A stretch of 64,000 nt of DNA from Phyllobates terribilis (taxonomy: Eukaryota): the NCBI RefSeq assembly GCF_046119375.1, contig NW_027362768.1, positions 89,900,001 to 89,964,000 of the forward strand. Reading direction: 5' to 3'. Numbering within the stretch: position 1 is the stretch's first letter; every line of letters starts with the position of its first letter. Below the pieces are notes generated by a model that saw nothing but the letters and a program-made list of their open reading frames with translations, did not search any database and had not been told where the DNA came from. Of the stretch, positions 7,941 to 44,639 are shown piece after piece. Position numbers and translations under genes: made by a program.

Positions 7941-8119
7941 GTCAGCACAGCGCCCTCTGCTGGCCGCGCTCTTCCTTGCTCACGTGTGTGCTGGTGGGGG
8001 AGCGACAAGTGATATTCCGCAGACCTGAGTGTAATGTGCTAGAATAATTGTGGGACATGTACAAAAGTGCAGAATAATGACTGTTCCTGCTGTAAATACT
8101 TCCTGTGTACAACTGGCTG

Positions 8120-8925
8120 ATGGCAGCCTGCATTCTGCTGATGGATCTGACTCCTCTGCTGGTATTAGATCGGTGTAACAGACATGGTGCATGTGTACAG
8201 ATGGCAGCCTGCATTCTGCTGATGGATCTGACTCCTCTGCTGGTATTAGATCGGTGTAACAGACATGGTGCATGTGTACAGATGGCAGCCTGCATTCTGC
8301 TGATGGATCTGACTCCTCTGCTGGTATTAGATCGGTGTAACAGACATGGTGCATGTGTACAGATGGCAGCCTGCATTCTGCTGATGGATCTGACTCCTCT
8401 GCTGGTATTAGATCGGTGTAACAGACATGGTGCATGTGTACAGATGGCAGCCTGCATTCTGCTGATGGATCTGACTCCTCTGCTGGTATTAGATCGGTGT
8501 AACAGACATGGTGCATGTGTACAGATGGCAGCCTGCATTCTGCTGATGGATCTGACTCCTCTGCTGGTATTAGATCGGTGTAACAGACATGGTGCATGTG
8601 TACAGATGGCAGCCTGCATTCTGCTGATGGATCTGACTCCTCTGCTGGTATTAGATCGGTGTAACAGACATGGTGCATGTGTACAGATGGCAGCCTGCAT
8701 TCTGCTGACGGATCTGACTCCTCTGCTGGTATTAGATCGGTGTAACAGACATGGTGCATGTGTACAGATGGCAGCCTGCATTCTGCTGACGGATCTGACT
8801 CCTGCTGCTCTGTTATTAGATGGCTGTATGTGACATGTAGAATTTGAAAGACTGGGTGGACAGATGGCAGCCTGCATTCTGCTGACAGATCTGACTCCTC
8901 TGCTGCTGTTATTAGATGGCTGCAT
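8120..8925. repeat. 81-bp minisatellite in METTL13 intron 1
   Basis: Eight near-identical units start at 8120, 8201, 8282, 8363, 8444, 8525, 8606 and 8687; diverged units start at 8768 and about 8864. Confidence 0.96.
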
Positions 8926-9544
8926 CATACATGGTGGATGCTTTGGGGATTTCCTGTGTGACTTTTCCAGCTAAGCCCCTCAGCACATTACAGAACAATA
9001 CAAGTGAATGATGTTTGCATATCTGCACGCGTTTCCAGACTTGATTTTCATTGCAATCCTAAAAATCATGTAGCTGCAGGGACATGTGTGAACGTTCTCT
9101 TCCTCTAATCAGGTCTTAAATGGGGTTGTTCAGTCATATAATATTGATACATATTCCACTGTCAGGTCATCAGGCTCAGCCTATTCATGTGACTTGGAGC
9201 TGATCTGCTGTACTCGGCAGCTGCTGCTACTCGTTGAATGCAGCACTGCTGTTCAGCTCCATTGTTTACATCCGGCCACTACTAGTGCTAATGACAGCTG
9301 ATGAGTGGGGTGCCAACAATCTCTAATATTGAGTATGTGTACTATGGGTGTGTCATAACTGTTTTATGCTTAGAGAACCCCTTTGTTTCTGGTCTGTGGG
9401 AGGAAATCCATGCAAACATGGAGAAAAGATACAAACTCCAGCAGATGTGGTCCTTGGTTGGATTTTAACCCAAGTCTGCACAGGAGCAGTGCCAATCATT
9501 GAGACACCATGCCTTACATTGTTATCCTCATTTATTTCTTCCAG

Positions 9545-12826: not shown

Positions 12827-14042
12827 AACTTAAGTACAGAAATTAATTTGCGCTGCACTAAAGGACAATAGTCAGGGGATTAAGAAAAAGGTAGTTTATT
12901 AAAAATTTAGTAAAAGGATAAAATCTGGATTAAGTCGGTAGACAAAAGCAGGGACAGTCTGGATTTAGGGTCTTAGTCGAGGTCCAAGATACCAGTGATG
13001 GATGGCTGCCACTAGGGAGGGGAAAGAAAAGAGGTGATTTAGTGAGGAAATAGTTAAAACAAGATAACCTATTAGGTTACCTATAGGTGGGAGGACCAGC
13101 AAGGATTACCTGGAGGTTGGATGGTTCAATAAAGACACATATGTAGCTGGGTCCACTAAGGCGTGTGAAGAGGGGCTAATTAAAGGGGTAATAAATATAA
13201 GATTAGAATTTTATTATTAATAAAATGCTTAAAAGTGTTTACAAATATATAAAAAATATATATTTACCAATATCCTGAATAAGCTTGTAGTGGCCAGTAG
13301 GTGGAACAGGTTAGAAGTGGTTCCTGCTGAAAACCTGGGTAATTATAAATGGCAATTTAATGCAAAGGTGAAGTTGGAGGAGGGTAGCTGATACCAGCTT
13401 ATGGGTATTTAGGGCCAGGAGGGGGGGGGGGGGGTTACCTGTTGGAAAGAGGTCAGAGTAGAATGCACTAGAAGGCTAGGCTGTGGAGAGTGAGGCTGGA
13501 ATAACACCCTGTTATTTAGGGAGAAGAGGGTGACTCTCCTAGATTGGGGTAGATTAGTAAGAGGGCTGTGAAAGGCTGTGCCCAGTGGTCACAACTGTGA
13601 ACCTAACTGGGTAAAAGAAGGACAGTTTAATATAGTATTAATGCCTGGTAGCAAATAGCGAGAAACAAAAAGGGATTACCTTAATGTAGTAAGGTGGTGT
13701 GTCAGATGACTCTGTAGATTGTGTAATAGGGCACCCAGAGGGAGGCGCAGCTGTATGGTAGGACTGTGCTGCGGCTGTGCTGTAGGAGGCTTGTGTTGGA
13801 GGCCACTGGCAGATGTTCAGACGGAGCAGCTTACCTCTTTACGTGGAGCTGTATGTGCCGAGTGGTCAGAGCTAGCGATGAGTCCAGAAAATAGAACGAG
13901 GAGGAGCGGAGTCCCGGCCGGTGACTCGTGCTCTAAACCTTGCGGAGCGGTGCGGATGTGCTGTCGGGTCTTCCAGGACCTGACGTGACGTCACAGTCAC
14001 GTGTGGAGCACGTGATCTAGTAAGTTACGGTGAGGCAGAAGG

Positions 14043-14092
14043 ACCAATTCCTACGCGTTTCGAAAGCTACGGCTTTCTTCATCAGGGATGGT
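14043..14092 (-). ncRNA. Minimal type I hammerhead ribozyme
   Basis: Minus strand reads ACCAUCC-CUGAUGA-A-GAAAGC(CGUA)GCUUUC-GAAA-CGCG-UA/GGAAUUGGU: full catalytic core, 6-bp helix II, palindromic ACGCGU helix III, helix I UCC/GGA plus ACCA/UGGU. Confidence 0.85.
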
Positions 14093-14314
14093 GTAACTTC
14101 TGCCCGTGGTCCTTTATATAGTAGATGTCAGTGGATTCCAATTAATGGATCAGTCTTTGTTAATGATTTGATGCTTAGGCCATTGTTAATCATTAAAAGC
14201 GAAGATCTCAAACTCGCTGTTAAGGCCTTTTGGCTTAAGTGTGTCCATTTTGAATATCCAGAAACTTTCAGCACGGGACATACTTTTAATGTAGTCACCA
14301 CTGCGCCAATTTTT

Positions 14315-14704
14315 TTATACAGTTTGTATCCCCATTATCTGGGTGCCCAATGTGTTACCCCCATGTTTTTCCAGATAATGTGCAGACAAGGGATGTCCAG
14401 TAAAATGATTTTTAATATTGCGTAGGTGTTCATTGATGCGTTTAAACATGGGGCGTTTAGTACGTCCCACGTACATCTTTTCACAAGGGCATTTTAAACA
14501 GTAAATTACACCTGGTGTGGAGCATGTTATGAATTCAGTGATGGGATACTCTTTCTGTTGAGTTTTAATTGTTTTTTGTTTGAGAGTTAGTGAATGTTTA
14601 CATGCGTTACATTTTTTGCAGGGAAAGAAGCCTCTCAGATTTTTGGTAAACGCATTTGAAGCGTTCAGGAGGTTCGGTGGATTTCTTATAGATGGGGCAA
14701 TCAA
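14315..14704 (-). pseudogene. Penelope GIY-YIG endonuclease with Cys-rich linker
   Basis: VIYCLKCPCEKMYVGRTKR...RINEH (GIY-YIG) preceded by FPCKKCNAC, the zinc-finger-like linker typical of the Neptune clade. Frameshifted from the RT ORF. Confidence 0.9.
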
Positions 14705-14802
14705 ATTGCCCAGATTCTGAGCCTTTCTAAAAATAAACCTCGGGTTTGGTGGTAGTTTACCCCCCAGAGTTTTATCATCCTTAAGGATATCCCAATGTTT
14801 TT

Positions 14803-16260
14803 TTACAATTTTTTTTTAATAAGATGAATGTTAGAGTTGAATTGTAAAATTATTGGGATATCTATGCTAGTTTCCTTACTCGCGAAATGGAGTCTGGGAT
14901 TTTTTTCCGCCAGTATTTGGTTCCTAGGGATTTCCTGGACTTTAGTTTTGGCTGATTCTAGGAATTTTGCATGGTATCCCTTCTCTAGGAATTTCTTTGT
15001 CACACTCTCTGCTTCTACCTCAAAGTCAAGTGCGTGTGAGCAATTGCGGTAGAGTCTGGTATATTGGCTACGGGGTATGTTTAGTAACCATTGTGGTAAA
15101 TGGCAACTGTCCGATGGGATGAAACTGTTGGCGTCCGTTGGTTTCGAGTAGGTTCGGGTATGTAAGTGCCCTTGATCTATGTATATATTTAAGTCCAGGA
15201 AGTTGATTTGTTCAGAGCTAGTGTGAGATGGAAATTCCAGATGGAAATCATTTGTATTAATTTCCCCGAGGAAAGTATTCAGTGAGTCCTTGGTGCCGGA
15301 CCAAATGAATATAACGTCGTCTATGAATCTTTGCCATAGGACCAGGTTCGCACGCAGCGCACCCCCGGGATAGATGGCGGACTGTTCCCACCTGCCCACA
15401 TAGAGGTTTGCGTAGCTAGGTGCGAACCTGGTCCCCATAGCTGTGCCCAACTGCTGGGTGTAGTAGTGCCCCTCGTGTAGAAAAAAATTATGGGTCAAAA
15501 TGAAATGCATACATTCTTTTAAAAAAGAGATTTGTTCTGGTGGTGTCTGGCTGAAGGTTTTTAGGAAATGTGCTGATGCATCGCAGCCTTTATCATGCTG
15601 TATAACCGTATATAGTGAAGTTATATCTAAAGTGCCCAAAATGTAGGTATCCTTCCATTCTATTTTATTAAGCGTTTGTAGTATATGCTTGCTGTCCTTG
15701 AGGTGAGATGGAAGTTTAGGGACAAGTTCCTGAAGATGATGGTCAATAAATCTGGATAGGTTGGAAGTAAGGCATTGTATGCCAGATATGATTGGTCTTC
15801 CGGGGGGATTGGAAAGGGATTTATGAATCTTAGGTAAATAGTAGAAGACAGCCGTCTTTGGATGGAGGATGTTAATGTATTCAAACTCATTTTTATTTAT
15901 ATAGCCAGAGTGTAGGCCTTTTAATGTGAGTTCCTTCAGTTCAAGACCGTACATAGTGGTAGGATCGTGGTCTAAGATTTTGTATGTACGGGTGTCATTC
16001 AGAATTCTGGAAGCTTCGTTCTGATATTGATGCAGATCCAAAATTACGATACCGCCTCCTTTATCGGCTGGTCTTATGACAATTTGCTTATTTTTCTGTA
16101 ATTGTCGTATGGCTTTATATTCTGGTGCTGTAAGATTATTCCTATATTTAACACACTTTCTGTCACTTATACGGCGTATGTCAGAGATAGTGTTTTTCTG
16201 AAAGCTGAGAAGGGCCTCCGAATACTCATTGAGAGGGTTAAAGTTGGATTTGTTTTTCAA
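14803..16260 (-). pseudogene. Penelope reverse transcriptase, 485 aa open stretch
   Basis: Motifs RPADKGGGIV, LPKIHK..PPGRPIISG, LDITSLYT, GTAMGTRFAPSYANL, RFIDDVIFIW, INFLDL. Confidence 0.93.
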
Positions 16261-16520
16261 TTTGGTATGTACAAATGGATCATTAGGTTCCCGTATGGCC
16301 TCGTTTGCTCATTAGGTTCCCGTTCAAGGCACTGTAAATACTTCCATTAACCCTCAAGACATAGCACCCCATTCTAGTGAACGTTGGGGTCTCTGCTGTG
16401 GGATCCCCTCAGATCATACATTTATTTTGAACCCTGTGATTATGACAAGTGATATTTTTGTTTGTGGATAACCCTATTTTTTGTCTTTATTGTGGTCTCC
16501 ATCTTCTGCCAATTTCACAG

Positions 16521-18300: not shown

Positions 18301-18549
18301 GTAAGACTCGTGAGACAGGACATGTGCGGAGGCTCTGTGGTGTGTGTCCGCGTAGGGGGAAAGCTACAAGTGACGTAAGGAAGAGCTACTGGAGCCTGGT
18401 ACTGACATTTCTCCCCCTGTACATCACCTGTTGTCAGATCCTTTACCAGTAAGGGAGGACATGCATGCTCTGATTTTAGGGGGAGATTTTTGTTTTTTAC
18501 TACTGAAAAGTTGAGTTTGAGGGGTTTTGATCTGTGTATGAAGACGAGG

Positions 18550-19885
18550 GCATCCACCCAGTTCCCTCATTTATGTTTCCTTCCTTTTGAAGTCCACACC
18601 GTTAGACTCTTCAAACCCTTCTCCCTGCGAGTGGCAGTTGTATATCGCCCTCCAGGCTCCTCCCATCAGTTTCTGGATCACTTTGCCACCTGGCTTCCGC
18701 ACTTCCTATCCTGTGATATTCCCACTCTCATCATGGAGGACTTTAACATACCCATTGATAACCCGCTTTCCCCATCTGCCTCTCATCTTCTTTCTCTAAC
18801 CTCCTCATTCGGCCTCTCTCAGCTAACTAACTCTCCTACACATGAAGACAGGAATACTCTGGACTTGGTATTCTCATGACTCTGCTCGCTGCATGACTTT
18901 ACTAACTCCCCTCTACCACTCTCTGGCCAAAACCTTCTTTCCTTCTCTGTCAAGAATTGTCTCCTCACCCGGGACACCCCCACTTACCATACACACAGGA
19001 ATCTACGTGCCATTAATACCCAGCAGCTTATGAACAATCTACAGTCATCTTTAGCTCCCATCTTCTCCCTCTCCTGTCCAGACTCAGCATTGTCACACTA
19101 TAACCACACATTGCAGAGTGCACTGGATGAATCAGCACCTGCTACATGCAGAATGACCGGACATAGATGGCAGCCCTGGCACACAATGCAAACACGTTTT
19201 CTCCAGCGCTGCTCAAGATGTGCTGAGCGTCTGTGGAGAAAATCACTTTCAGCAGAAGACATCATCCACTATAAGTTCATACTCAAAACTTATAATGCTG
19301 CTCTCCATCTGGCTAAACAAGTCTACTTTACTACTCTCATCACATCTCTAGCCAACAATCCTAAACGACTCATTGAAGCCTTCCACTCCCTCCTGAGCCC
19401 TAAAGAACAGACCCCCGTCACCAACCTAAGTCCTTTCGATCTGGCCACTTATTTCCTACAAAAAATCAATCATATCCGTCAAGACATTCTTGCACAATCC
19501 CGTCAGAGTCTGGATCCCCTTCCCTCCTGCACTTCAAATTCACTTTTCATCTTCGAAACGGTCACAGAAGAAGTGACCAGACTCCTCGCTTCTTCTCGCC
19601 CTACAACCTGCAACAGTGACCCTATTCCATCACATTTCCTTCAGTCCCGTTCCCCAGCTGTCACTACCCACCTAACTAAAATATTCAACCTCTCTCTTTC
19701 TTTGGGTATCTTTCCCTTCTCATTCAAACATGCCATCATAACCCCTTTACTTAAAAAGCCATCCCTGGACGAGAACTGCACTAACTGCAGACCGGTCTCT
19801 AATCTTCCCTTCATCTCTAAACTCCTGGAACGCTTGGTCCACTCCCGTCTAATCTTCTATCTCTCAGATAACTCTCTTCTCGACT
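18550..19885 (+). mobile_element. L2/CR1-type LINE, 5' part (AP endonuclease to start of RT)
   Basis: VAVVYRPP, IMEDFNIP, TLDLVF (APE); DPIPSH, IITPLLKKPSLD, RPVSNLPFISKLLERLV (RT N-terminus). Stops and frameshifts present. Confidence 0.88.
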
Positions 19886-19887
19886 CG

Positions 19888-20089
19888 ATCAAAGCAAAAG
19901 GTGTCTACTTTGAAGAACCTAGAATATAAGACATATTTTCAGTTGTTTCACACTTTTTTGTTAAGTATATAATTCCACATGTGTTAATTCATAGTTTTGA
20001 TGCCTTCAGCGTGAATGTACAATTTTCATAGTCATGAAAATACAGAAAAATCTTTAAATGAGGTGTGTCCAAACTTTTGGTCTGTACTG
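19888..20089 (+). mobile_element. Right end of a DD38E-family Tc1
   Basis: IKAKGVYFEEPRI-stop, then an intact right TIR ending GGTCTGTACTG followed by TA at 20090-20091. Confidence 0.9.
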
Positions 20090-23286: not shown

Positions 23287-25062
23287 TGATCTACTAACAC
23301 CTTAATCTAATGGTCACTACTCCCTGCTGTTTCTCCTGGATCTCTCTGCTGCTTTTGACACTGTGGATCACCAGCTCCTCCTCACTATTTTCCGCTCTGT
23401 AGGCCTCAAGGACACTGTTCTCTCCTGGTTCTCCTTCTCTCTCTCTGACCGCTCCTTCACGGTATCTTTTGCCGGCTCTTCTTCCTCTAACCTTTTCCTT
23501 ACTATTGGGGTTCCACAAGACTCAGTCTTAGGTCCCCTCCTCTTCTTGTATAGTGCCCCTATTGGGCAAGCCATCAGGAGATTTGGTTTCCAGTATCATC
23601 TCTATGAAGATGACACCAAACTATACACCTCTTCACCTGACATCACCCCCACTCTAATACAAAATACTAATGATTGTCTGTCCGCTGTCTCGAACATCAT
23701 GTCCTCCTTCTATCTGAAACTGAATCTCTCCAAAACTGAACTCCTTATTTTTCCTCCCTCTACTAACCTACCTATACCTGACTTTTCAATTTCCTTGGGT
23801 GGTGCCACCTTAACTCCCAAGCAGCAAGCTCGCTGTCTTGGAGTCATATTTGACACACAACTTTCCTTTATTCCCCATATTCAATCACTCGCTCTTGTCA
23901 CACCTGCACCTTAAAAACATCTCCAGAATCCGACCTTTTCTCACCTTTGATACTGCAAAAACTCTTACTGCTACTCTTATTCACTCTCGTCTGGACTACT
24001 GCAACTCTCTTCTAATCGGTCTCCCTCTAAACAAACTCTCCCCTCTCCCATCCATCCTAAACGCAGCAGCCAGGGTCTTCTATCATTCCGCTTCACCGAC
24101 GCCTCTACCCTGTGCCAGTCATGGCACTGGTTACTAGTGATGAGCGAGTATGTTTTATTAACCCTTTCGCTGAATATACTCTGGCGAGCACTGAGTAGTT
24201 ACAGCTGCTCGGTGATATGTTTGAATCACTCCCGTGTGTGTTATTTGCGACTGTTTGACAGCTTTAATACATGTGAGGATTGTCTATTTCTTACACATTC
24301 CTCACATGTATTAAAGCTGTCAAATCATGCACACAGGAGTGATTCAAACATAACACCGAGCAGCTATAAATACTCGGTGCTCGCCCGAGCATACTCGGCG
24401 AAAGGGTTAACAGAACATACTCGCTCATCACTACTGGTTACCCATTCACCACATAATACAATACAAACTCATCTCTCTCACCCACAAAGCTCTCCACAGT
24501 TCTGCACCAGCCTATATCTCATCCCTCATTTCTGTCTATTGCCCCTCTCGTGCCCTTCGTTCTGCAACTGATCTAAAACTAACATCATCCTTAATCTGAA
24601 CCTCACACCTCTGTCTCCAAGACTTCTCTCGTGCCGTGCCAGTTTTCTGAAATGCACTACCCCAAACGATCCAACTGATATCTAGCCCCATGTGTTCATA
24701 TGTGCTTTAAAAACACATCTGTTTAGACAAGCCTACCACCTCAACTCGCCAACCTAACTCTCCCCTGTTCCCTCCTAAATGTTAATCTTAATCTGCCCCT
24801 GCGTATTCATCTGTCTCTACATCCTCCATGCACCAAATACCACACGGTAACTGCACTTAGACAGATACTGGCTGATGACTATGTTCTACCTATTGTGTCA
24901 CCCCATTTCCATATAGATTGTAAGCTTGCGAGCAGGACCCTCAATACTCCTGTAACTGCTGAAATGTGATACATTGTATTGTTTATATTGTCTGTATATG
25001 TCCCTACTTAATTGTAAAGTGTTACTTAATATGTTGGCGCTATATAAATAAAAATGACTATT
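23287..25062 (+). mobile_element. L2-type LINE, 3' part with intact 3' end
   Basis: [49 protein letters not shown]; 3' tail TAGATTGTAAGCT...TTGGCGCTATATAAATAAA. Confidence 0.88.
24135..24433. mobile_element. 299-bp hAT-type MITE inserted in the L2
   Basis: TIRs TAGTGATGAGCGAGTATG / CATACTCGCTCATCACTA; perfect 8-bp TSD CTGGTTAC at 24127-24134 and 24434-24441. Confidence 0.93.
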
Positions 25063-44029: not shown

Positions 44030-44639
44030 TTAAAAAAAAAAAAAAAAAAAGATTAAACTCCAAAGTTGTAGATTTTCAGGTGCCGCACTTCACTAAAGAA
44101 AATGCCATAAAAAAATATTTACCCCCGAATGGTAACACTAAAAAGGTCGCCATCCCAAAAAAAAGTTCTCACACGGCTCCTCTAACGCAGAAATAAAAAA
44201 GGTTATGGGCGGCACAAACCCCAATTTTTTTTATTTTAGAAATTTCCAAGTTTTTTTATTTTTTTACTTTTTATATAGAAAAAAAAATGTCTATACAAGT
44301 TTTGATTTAGGCATTTTCACCTCACAATGAACACAAGAAAAACAATGGCAGAATTGTCCTTCAGAACTACAGCTCGTCCTGCAACAAGCCCTTCATGTAG
44401 CTACATTGATGGAAACATTAAAACGTTATGTCTCTCTGAAGAAGGAGAGGTCATTTAACACCATTTGTGCAGAGGACATTTTATGGAATGTGAATGTGAC
44501 TTAATTTTACTGACCTTTCAATAGGGAAATAAGTAGGAATGTCATCTAGTACATATAGGCCAGAGCGGTGTTCTCTACTTAATAGCCCGAAAGCTCCACG
44601 TAATCCTCTGTTGAAGGCTCTCTGTTATTTAATGTCTAG

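What the first reader, a model, noticed from the sequence alone, without database searches (positions are those of the whole stretch)
14043..14092. Intact hammerhead ribozyme in the tail of a Neptune-type Penelope element
All core nucleotides are present on the element-sense strand: CUGAUGA, GAAA, and a GUA cleavage triplet with the predicted cut between 14052 and 14051. There is an extra A between A9 and G10.1, a variant known from a viroid hammerhead. Helix III is only the palindrome ACGCGU, as in the minimal PLE hammerheads thought to work as dimers. Only one copy is present here, so cleavage would need a partner in trans or a monomeric fold. It is antisense to METTL13, so it should not cut that pre-mRNA.
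Basis: partly seen in the sequence, partly recalled or inferred. Interest (0 to 1): 0.7.

Follow-up and report, generated by a model that had tools for sequence, protein, structure and literature searches.

The report
Frog Penelope retrotransposon minimal hammerhead copy
This is a real but ordinary copy of the small "minimal hammerhead" self-cutting RNA motif that Penelope-like jumping genes are known to carry; it sits behind a dead, truncated element in a frog intron, and a single copy like this is not expected to cut on its own.

Summary
On the minus strand at 14100-14036 (core 14092-14043) lie CUGAUGA, an extra A, a 6-bp helix II, GAAA, the palindrome ACGCGU, a GUA triplet (cut 14052|14051) and an interrupted helix I. 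My descriptor finds it once in the window, against about 0.01 expected by chance.

It starts about 85 nt after the stop codon of a 5'-truncated, frameshifted, stop-interrupted RT/GIY-YIG Penelope-like ORF (16278-14186, minus). That ORF has the CxxCxxC linker of Neptune/Nematis elements, and its relatives are all anuran.

Rfam's hammerhead models do not hit it. They also miss 15 of 16 equivalent motifs in independent Penelope loci, so that negative says little. A covariance model built from 15 such loci, without the window, ranks this site first (22.2 bits, E about 2e-4).

All four published hallmarks of Penelope minimal hammerheads (Cervera and De la Peña 2014) are met. The "viroid-like" extra A is one of them, not an oddity.

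Two copies are predicted to fold into the classical double hammerhead, but the window holds no partner. The element is dead and lies antisense in a METTL13-like intron.

Verdict: a genuine member of a known kind, probably inert here. The scan has noted many similar motifs elsewhere in this genome.

The parts
14036..14100 (-).
   Evidence: Sequence read. Fold. Own descriptor, single hit. Covariance model R1, top hit 14093-14044, 22.2 bits, E 2e-4.
14079..14085 (-). CUGAUGA box (C3-A9). The unpaired extra A follows at 14078.
   Evidence: The extra nucleotide is a class hallmark (PMC4209133).
14062..14077 (-). Helix II, 6 bp (GAAAGC/GCUUUC), with a G10.1-C11.1 closing pair and loop CGUA.
   Evidence: The equivalent pairs covary in 15 independent Penelope loci.
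14052..14061 (-). GAAA box, the ACGCGU palindrome (the only 'helix III') and the GUA cleavage triplet. Predicted cut 14052|14051.
   Evidence: The cofold of two copies forms an intermolecular 6-bp ACGCGU:ACGCGU helix.
14049..14089 (-). 41-nt hammerhead core shared with many otherwise unlike contigs of the same species.
   Evidence: Loose ends pile up at 14048/14049 and at 14089 in two DNA runs: 19 and 12 contigs in X1, 20 and 10 in X4. The flanks agree only about 0.5.
14186..16278 (-). Remnant of a Penelope-like ORF (RT plus C-terminal GIY-YIG endonuclease). About 118 residues are missing at the 5' end. There is a frameshift near 14810 and an in-frame stop at 14317-14315. The normal stop codon is 14188-14186.
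   Evidence: tblastn of anuran relatives. Homology search: 438 relatives, best 56% identity. GIY-YIG Pfam hit below its cut-off. Sequence.
14600..14620 (-). CxxCxxC zinc-finger-like linker between RT and endonuclease (Neptune/Nematis hallmark).
   Evidence: Translation. The three cysteines are invariant in alignment A1. Definition in PMC8557442.
13960..14035 (-). Repeated sequence continuing 3' of the hammerhead, probably the rest of the pseudo-LTR. It contains CACGTG twice and TGACGTCA.
   Evidence: Many contigs at 80% likeness or more lie here. Exact single-locus contigs stop at about 13950-13959. That this is part of the pseudo-LTR is an inference.

Best explanation
This is the hammerhead of the downstream pseudo-LTR of a dead Penelope-like retrotransposon, probably of the Neptune clade, in a frog genome.

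How the class is thought to work: in live elements, tandem or partly tandem copies are transcribed as one long RNA. Two minimal hammerheads pair through their palindromic 15.x/16.x nucleotides, here ACGCGU, and build an extended intermolecular helix III (a 'double hammerhead'). Each core then cuts after H17, here GUA|G, leaving a 2',3'-cyclic phosphate and a 5'-OH. This trims the element RNA to unit length, possibly helped by the element's own protein.

At this locus the motif is intact in sequence. However, the element is 5'-truncated and so has lost its upstream pseudo-LTR, promoter and partner hammerhead. Its ORF is broken, and it lies antisense in an intron. The motif is therefore most likely an inert fossil.

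Shown here: the motif, its context, its class membership and the predicted dimer fold. Inferred: cleavage, its role in processing, and inactivity at this locus.
For: - Motif and coordinates.
- Chance expectation 0.01 per window.
- Outer helix I starts 85 nt after the stop of an RT/GIY-YIG ORF, on the same strand.
- In 80 independent Penelope loci fetched by protein similarity, 24 descriptor hits in 22 loci. All 24 are on the ORF-sense strand, 163-593 nt (one at 1492) after the protein match or about 0.9-1.4 kb before it. 21 of 24 have the extra A, 23 of 24 a palindromic helix III core, and helix II is mostly 6-7 bp.
- Helices I and II covary in 15 of these: 95.9% of cells paired, against 26-42% when the partners are slid.
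- A model built from them finds the window motif as top hit, E 2e-4.
- Cofold: the dimer is -34.5 kcal/mol against 2 x -14.7, and has the domain-swapped double-hammerhead topology.
- Literature: hallmarks of the class, about 9,000 copies in Xenopus tropicalis, no monomer cleavage and weak dimer cleavage (PMC4209133). A Poseidon hammerhead cut only when the element's protein was added, and mutating it did not affect insertion in vitro (PMC11167929).
Against: - No Rfam hammerhead model matches, even at E 10 or less on 76 nt. This is weakened by the control.
- As a monomer the hammerhead-compatible fold (-12.1) is less stable than the minimum free energy fold (-14.7), and the fold z-score is only -1.37.
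- No cleavage data. The runs available were contigs only, so RNA ends could not be seen.
- The pseudo-LTR status of the tail cannot be shown at this locus, because the upstream repeat is missing.
Confidence: 0.85

Rival explanations
1. The solitary copy is still a working ribozyme. It would either fold as a monomer, or be cut after pairing in trans, through ACGCGU, with transcripts of the many other family copies.
For: All core nucleotides are intact. The dimer is predicted to be 5 kcal/mol more stable than two monomers. Many contigs of the species carry the same 41-nt core. A run guessed to be RNA holds a related hammerhead contig (X9 record 22).
Against: Published monomers of this class show no cleavage, and dimers only weak cleavage (PMC4209133). 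The copy has lost its upstream promoter, so minus-strand transcription is unproven. This copy differs from the family majority at roughly 3% of positions, so an unchanged 50-nt motif is expected about one time in five without selection (my estimate).
Confidence: 0.07
2. The hammerhead block belongs to a separate short non-autonomous element (a solo pseudo-LTR, a monomer of a non-LTR retrozyme, or a SINE-like repeat) that merely abuts the ORF remnant.
For: Contigs that share only 14049-14089, and contigs that join 14129 to 14306 or to 14711, show the block exists in other arrangements. Retrozymes derived from Penelope pseudo-LTRs are abundant in amphibians, many as dispersed monomers (preprint 10.64898/2026.07.22.740005).
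Against: Same strand as the ORF. It lies close behind the ORF stop (about 100 nt here), as in independent full elements, where the gap is 163-593 nt after the protein match. Contigs that skip parts of the ORF end still link the ORF to the block.
Confidence: 0.06
3. A chance match to the hammerhead consensus.
For: Rfam models do not recognise it.
Against: 0.01 expected per window. Exact expected context and strand. Hit by a class-specific model, E 2e-4. The Rfam models miss the class in general.
Confidence: 0.01

Closest known systems
Minimal hammerheads (min-HHR) of metazoan Penelope-like elements (Cervera and De la Peña 2014, PMC4209133; Lünse, Weinberg and Breaker 2017, known to me only through the review PMC6765202)
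   Same: Type I topology. Unpaired nucleotide between 9 and 10.1. G10.1-C11.1 pair. Long helix II (6 bp). Short interrupted helix I. Helix III reduced to a palindrome. Location in the terminal non-coding part of the element, on the ORF-sense strand. Amphibian host.
   Different: Nothing structural. This copy is solitary because the element is 5'-truncated. Its helix III palindrome is CGCG within ACGCGU, seen in only 1 of 24 of the relatives I recovered (L011), where TA is commonest.
Hammerhead of Poseidon PAc from Anolis carolinensis (PMC11167929)
   Same: A Penelope-like element hammerhead whose cleavage is weak or absent without help. This suggests the same may hold here.
   Different: In PAc the motif overlaps the start of the ORF. 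Here it follows the ORF stop. The clade also differs: no CxxCxxC linker in Penelope/Poseidon (PMC8557442).
Viroid CChMVd (+) hammerhead with an extra A between A9 and G10.1 (De la Peña and Flores 2001, as cited in PMC4209133)
   Same: [quoted passage not shown]
   Different: The viroid ribozyme has a stable helix III and loop-loop contacts, and it works within a circular RNA replicon. The resemblance is one feature, not kinship.
Newt satellite 2 and Schistosoma type I hammerheads, and non-LTR retrozymes (PMC7229834; preprint 10.64898/2026.07.22.740005)
   Same: Short palindromic helix III. Presumed action as dimers from tandem copies. Amphibian genomes.
   Different: Those have 4-bp helix II, 6-bp helix I and conserved loop contacts, sit in short tandem repeats, and are covered by Rfam models. 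This one is single, follows an ORF, and is missed by Rfam.

Membership tests
Hammerhead ribozyme (catalytic core) | C3 U4 G5 A6 N7 G8 A9 box | tested here: met
   CUGAUGA at 14085-14079, minus strand
Hammerhead ribozyme (catalytic core) | G12 A13 A14 plus the A15.1-U16.1 pair, and an NUH cleavage triplet | tested here: met
   GAAA 14061-14058, U 14053, GUA 14054-14052
Hammerhead ribozyme (catalytic core) | Three helices around the core | tested here: inconclusive
   Helices I and II form. Helix III is a single A-U pair in a monomer. A 6-bp helix III forms only between two copies in the cofold.
Hammerhead ribozyme (catalytic core) | Match to an Rfam hammerhead covariance model | tested here: not met
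   No hammerhead hit at gathering score or at E 10 or less. Control: only 1 of 16 Penelope-context motifs is seen by any Rfam hammerhead model, and that one scores below its gathering score.
Hammerhead ribozyme (catalytic core) | Site-specific Mg2+-dependent self-cleavage | not testable with these tools
   Runs were available only as contigs, which cannot show RNA ends.
Penelope-like element minimal hammerhead (PMC4209133) | [quoted passage not shown] | tested here: met
   A at 14078. 21 of 24 relatives have it, always A.
Penelope-like element minimal hammerhead (PMC4209133) | G10.1-C11.1 pair and a long helix II | tested here: met
   G14077-C14062, 6 bp. In relatives GC 12 of 15, mostly 6-7 bp.
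Penelope-like element minimal hammerhead (PMC4209133) | Palindromic 15.2-16.2 / loop 3 | tested here: met
   CGCG inside ACGCGU. 23 of 24 relatives are palindromic.
Penelope-like element minimal hammerhead (PMC4209133) | Lies in the terminal repeat of a Penelope-like element, on the ORF-sense strand | tested here: met
   Same strand as the RT/GIY-YIG ORF remnant, starting 85 nt after its stop. That the tail is a repeat (pseudo-LTR) cannot be shown at this truncated copy.
Penelope-like element minimal hammerhead (PMC4209133) | Match to a model of the class built without this sequence | tested here: met
   Model R1, from 15 metagenome Penelope loci: top hit 14093-14044, 22.2 bits, E 2e-4 (rough).
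Penelope-like element minimal hammerhead (PMC4209133) | A second copy nearby to form the active dimer | tested here: not met
   Only one motif in the 64 kb.
Neptune clade of Penelope-like elements | RT followed by a C-terminal GIY-YIG endonuclease | tested here: met
Neptune clade of Penelope-like elements | CX2-5CxxC zinc-finger-like linker between RT and endonuclease (shared with Nematis, absent from Penelope/Poseidon) | tested here: met
   CKKCNAC at 14620-14600. Invariant in relatives. Definition from PMC8557442.
Neptune clade of Penelope-like elements | Placement within Neptune in an RT tree with labelled references | not tested

The most novel reading that the evidence does not exclude
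The same 41-nt hammerhead core with the ACGCGU palindrome is shared by many otherwise unlike repeats of this frog. Transcripts of different elements could therefore pair in trans through that palindrome. Solitary copies such as this one would then still be cleaved, or would act as partners for others. That would make a genome-wide, trans-acting ribozyme network rather than strictly tandem-dependent processing.
Probability: 0.05. Interest if true: 0.5.

Novelty: new member of a known kind. Interest (0 to 1): 0.12.

Why it matters
It matters little beyond annotation. It is one more copy of a ribozyme class already described in thousands of copies in amphibian, fish and invertebrate genomes.

Two practical points come out of the work:
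- Rfam release 15 hammerhead models do not detect this class. Infernal/Rfam annotation of animal genomes will miss such motifs, and a simple class-specific model recovers them.
- The extra A after A9 should be read as a class hallmark, not as damage or a rarity.

The open questions remain open and are not made more testable by this single dead copy: whether these minimal hammerheads cleave in vivo, whether they need a partner or the element's protein, and what they do for the element.

Tried and rejected
- **Rfam, window:** scans of the whole window at gathering score and of 501-nt and 76-nt sub-windows at E 10 or less gave no hammerhead family. The weak hits were snoRNA and lncRNA noise.
- **Rfam, control:** only 1 of 16 Penelope-context motifs was seen, and below threshold. 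I therefore do not count the negative against the motif.
- **The look-up of encoding contigs:** I could not fetch the frog loci of the closest proteins and used metagenome contigs instead.
- **Sequencing runs:** all were Logan contigs, none on record as RNA. Laying them showed multi-copy status and the shared core, but no RNA ends, strand or level. Summed depth is not a copy number, so I did not use it as one.
- **Pfam on the 485-aa RT piece:** nothing at E 0.01 or less. RT identity rests.
- **ORF 19030-19929 (+):** checked as a possible METTL13 exon, with no PDB or Pfam hit. It is not one; the METTL13-like exons are elsewhere.
- **Lünse et al. 2017:** not held in the library.
- **Second hit of my model, 44428-44453:** lacks helix II and GAAA, so rejected.

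Full report
**1. The observation**

Read on the minus strand, the window carries a complete hammerhead core. The parts are:
- CUGAUGA at 14085-14079.
- One extra A at 14078.
- A 6-bp helix II, GAAAGC (14077-14072) with GCUUUC (14067-14062), closed by the loop CGUA.
- GAAA at 14061-14058.
- The six-letter palindrome ACGCGU at 14058-14053.
- A GUA triplet at 14054-14052, which puts the predicted cut between 14052 and 14051.
- Helix I in three short segments: UCC/GGA next to the core, then ACC/GGU, then GAAG/CUUC. Together they span 14100-14086 and 14051-14038.

The thermodynamic fold reproduces helix II and helix I, with the inner helix I segment (next to the core) shifted by one register.

**2. 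Is it more than chance?**

I wrote a relaxed descriptor. It asks for:
- CUGANGA, followed by 0-1 extra nucleotide;
- a helix II of at least 4 bp with a loop of 3-8;
- GAAA, followed by 0-12 nucleotides;
- U, then a non-G;
- a helix I of at least 3 bp.

It finds exactly this one site on both strands of the 64 kb. In 400 first-order Markov simulations of the window it found 0.01 sites per window. None of those had a helix II of 6 bp or a palindromic helix III.

**3. Context**

The motif lies on the same strand as a Penelope-like ORF remnant, just behind it.
- Anuran RT/GIY-YIG proteins align by tblastn to 16278-14195, minus strand. About the first 118 residues are missing. The frame changes near 14810.
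- The sequence also shows an in-frame stop at 14317-14315. The normal stop is at 14188-14186.
- The endonuclease piece hits the Pfam GIY-YIG family just under its cut-off.
- The piece carries CKKCNAC at 14620-14600, a CxxCxxC linker. These cysteines are invariant in an alignment of nine relatives. The linker is the stated hallmark of the Neptune and Nematis clades as against Penelope/Poseidon (PMC8557442).
- The word-based protein search found 438 relatives at E 1e-10 or better. All named ones are from frogs or a newt, and the best has 56% identity.
- The outer helix I starts 85 nt after the ORF stop.
- No upstream repeat survives, because the copy is 5'-truncated. No second hammerhead lies in the window.

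The + strand carries a methyltransferase gene.
- The ORF at 9509-10327 matches PDB entry 2pxx, a human class I methyltransferase, at E 8e-20.
- Its nearest named cluster in the protein atlas is 'eEF1A lysine and N-terminal methyltransferase', that is METTL13, at score 0.97.
- Further exons can be read by eye at about 7788, 16500, 18171 and 26998.

The hammerhead is not part of its pre-mRNA.

**4.

Rfam release 15 gives no hammerhead hit:
- at gathering scores on the whole window;
- at E 10 or less on 501 nt;
- at E 10 or less on 76 nt.

Before counting this against the motif I ran a control. I took 15 independent Penelope loci that carry 16 such motifs in the expected place. Rfam saw only one, the variant without the extra nucleotide, as Hammerhead_HH9 at 28.5 bits against a gathering score of 52. 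The Rfam models simply do not cover this class.

**5. Relatives from elsewhere**

Instead I searched the metagenome contigs with an alignment of nine relatives (A1) and obtained 80 Penelope loci. Their proteins are about 30% identical to the frog proteins.

My descriptor, slightly relaxed, gave 24 hits in 22 loci.
- All 24 are on the ORF-sense strand and none on the other.
- They lie 163-593 nt after the end of the protein match (one at 1492), or 0.9-1.4 kb before its start. One more lies within a composite match.
- One locus, L038, has two identical copies 3419 nt apart, the classical pseudo-LTR pair.

Three features were not required by the descriptor but are nearly universal:
- the extra nucleotide, in 21 of 24, always A;
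- a palindromic helix III core, in 23 of 24 (TA, GC, CG, CCGG, CGCG, TAGCTA);
- a helix II of 6-7 bp, in 18 of 24.

One locus, L011, has the same GAAACGCGUAGG as the window.

In an alignment of 15 distinct motifs (A2), 95.9% of cells in helices I and II form pairs, against 26-42% when the partners are slid. Nine of ten pairs change on both sides. The caveat is that part of this pairing was demanded by the descriptor.

A covariance model built from these 15, without the window, finds 14093-14044 (minus) as its best hit in the window, at 22.2 bits and E about 2e-4. This is similar to motifs that were not in the training set, which score 19-31 bits.

**6. Comparison with the literature**

Cervera and De la Peña (PMC4209133) defined the minimal hammerheads of metazoan Penelope-like elements. 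They listed four features that emerged beyond their search pattern:
- the G10.1-C11.1 pair;
- the palindromic 15.2-16.2 / loop 3;
- families rich in compensatory changes.

They also noted a long helix II and a short helix I. They found such motifs in Xena, Poseidon and Neptune elements of fishes, about 9,000 in Xenopus tropicalis, mostly as single motifs next to truncated elements.

The window's motif meets every one of these.

The same paper reports no cleavage by a monomer and weak cleavage by dimers. The review PMC6765202 summarises the view that they act as dimers. Work on the Poseidon element of Anolis found that its hammerhead cut only when the element's protein was added. Mutating it did not affect insertion in vitro, and no RNA-seq reads ended at its cut site (PMC11167929). 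A 2026 preprint links the pseudo-LTRs of amphibian Penelope-like elements to dispersed and tandem 'non-LTR retrozymes'.

**7. How it most likely works, and whether it works here**

Cofolding two copies of 14100-14036 gives -34.5 kcal/mol against -29.4 for two monomers. The predicted structure is the domain-swapped double hammerhead:
- an intermolecular ACGCGU:ACGCGU helix;
- the 5' strand of helix I of one molecule paired to the 3' strand of the other.

As a monomer, the hammerhead-compatible fold (-12.1) loses to the minimum free energy fold (-14.7).

This supports the published mechanism for the class: two copies on one tandem transcript, cutting after H17. At this locus, however, there is no partner, the upstream promoter-bearing repeat is lost, and the ORF is broken.

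The sequencing runs of the species were available only as contigs. They show three things:
- More than 300 contigs per DNA run lie on the 1.1-kb stretch at 80% likeness or more.
- Some 20 contigs per run share only 14049-14089 and then run on into unlike sequence.
- Other copies read differently at the position of the internal stop, so that stop is private to this copy.

None of the 40 best-supported differences lies inside 14034-14093; a further 200 differences were not shown. The copy differs from the family majority at roughly 3% of positions. An untouched 50-nt motif would therefore occur by chance about one time in five, and its intactness needs no selection at this locus.

I therefore read it as a genuine but inert relic (confidence 0.85). 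The smaller possibilities are that it can still be cut in trans (0.07), or that the block is a separate non-autonomous element abutting the ORF (0.06).

**8. Verdict**

- The extra A is typical of the class.
- The Rfam test is negative but uninformative.
- 'Neptune' rests on the linker motif alone.

It is a new member of a well-described kind. The scan's own index holds 51 notes on Penelope-type hammerheads in this same genome, and I did not test those. Interest is low.

Noticed in passing
window 7942-8928: A tandem repeat of about 81 nt, seen as long ORFs with a 27-residue period on both strands. It lies in the first intron of the METTL13-like gene.
   Followed up: no
window 18490-19929 and 23363-24137, + strand: ORFs that look by eye like endonuclease/RT fragments of a non-LTR retrotransposon. 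The ORF at 19030-19929 has no Pfam or PDB hit and is not a METTL13 exon.
   Followed up: partly
window 16320-16280, minus strand: A 15-nt direct repeat (ACGGGAACCTAATGA), twice, 28 nt apart, exactly at the 5' truncation point of the Penelope-like ORF. It may be a trace of the insertion event.
   Followed up: no
window 14015-13985, minus strand: Two CACGTG boxes and a TGACGTCA palindrome just 3' of the hammerhead, within the repeated block. They look like a promoter and may be the pseudo-LTR promoter of the element.
   Followed up: no
window 14129/14306 and 14129/14711: Contigs of the same species join these points, so deletion derivatives exist that lack the end of the ORF but keep the hammerhead block.
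   Followed up: no
window 44428-44453, + strand: Second hit of my hammerhead model (13.6 bits, E 0.095). It is only a CUGAAGAA box inside a short hairpin, with no helix II or GAAA, so it is not a hammerhead.
   Followed up: yes
L055:106-155: A Penelope-context minimal hammerhead with the U3-A8 core covariation described for Cercyon elements in PMC4209133.
   Followed up: no
L075:164-206 (minus) and L040:4325-4756: L075 has an inverted hammerhead just upstream of its ORF, which fits the known inverted 5'-truncated copy arrangement. L040 has two tRNA genes within 500 nt after its hammerhead.
   Followed up: no
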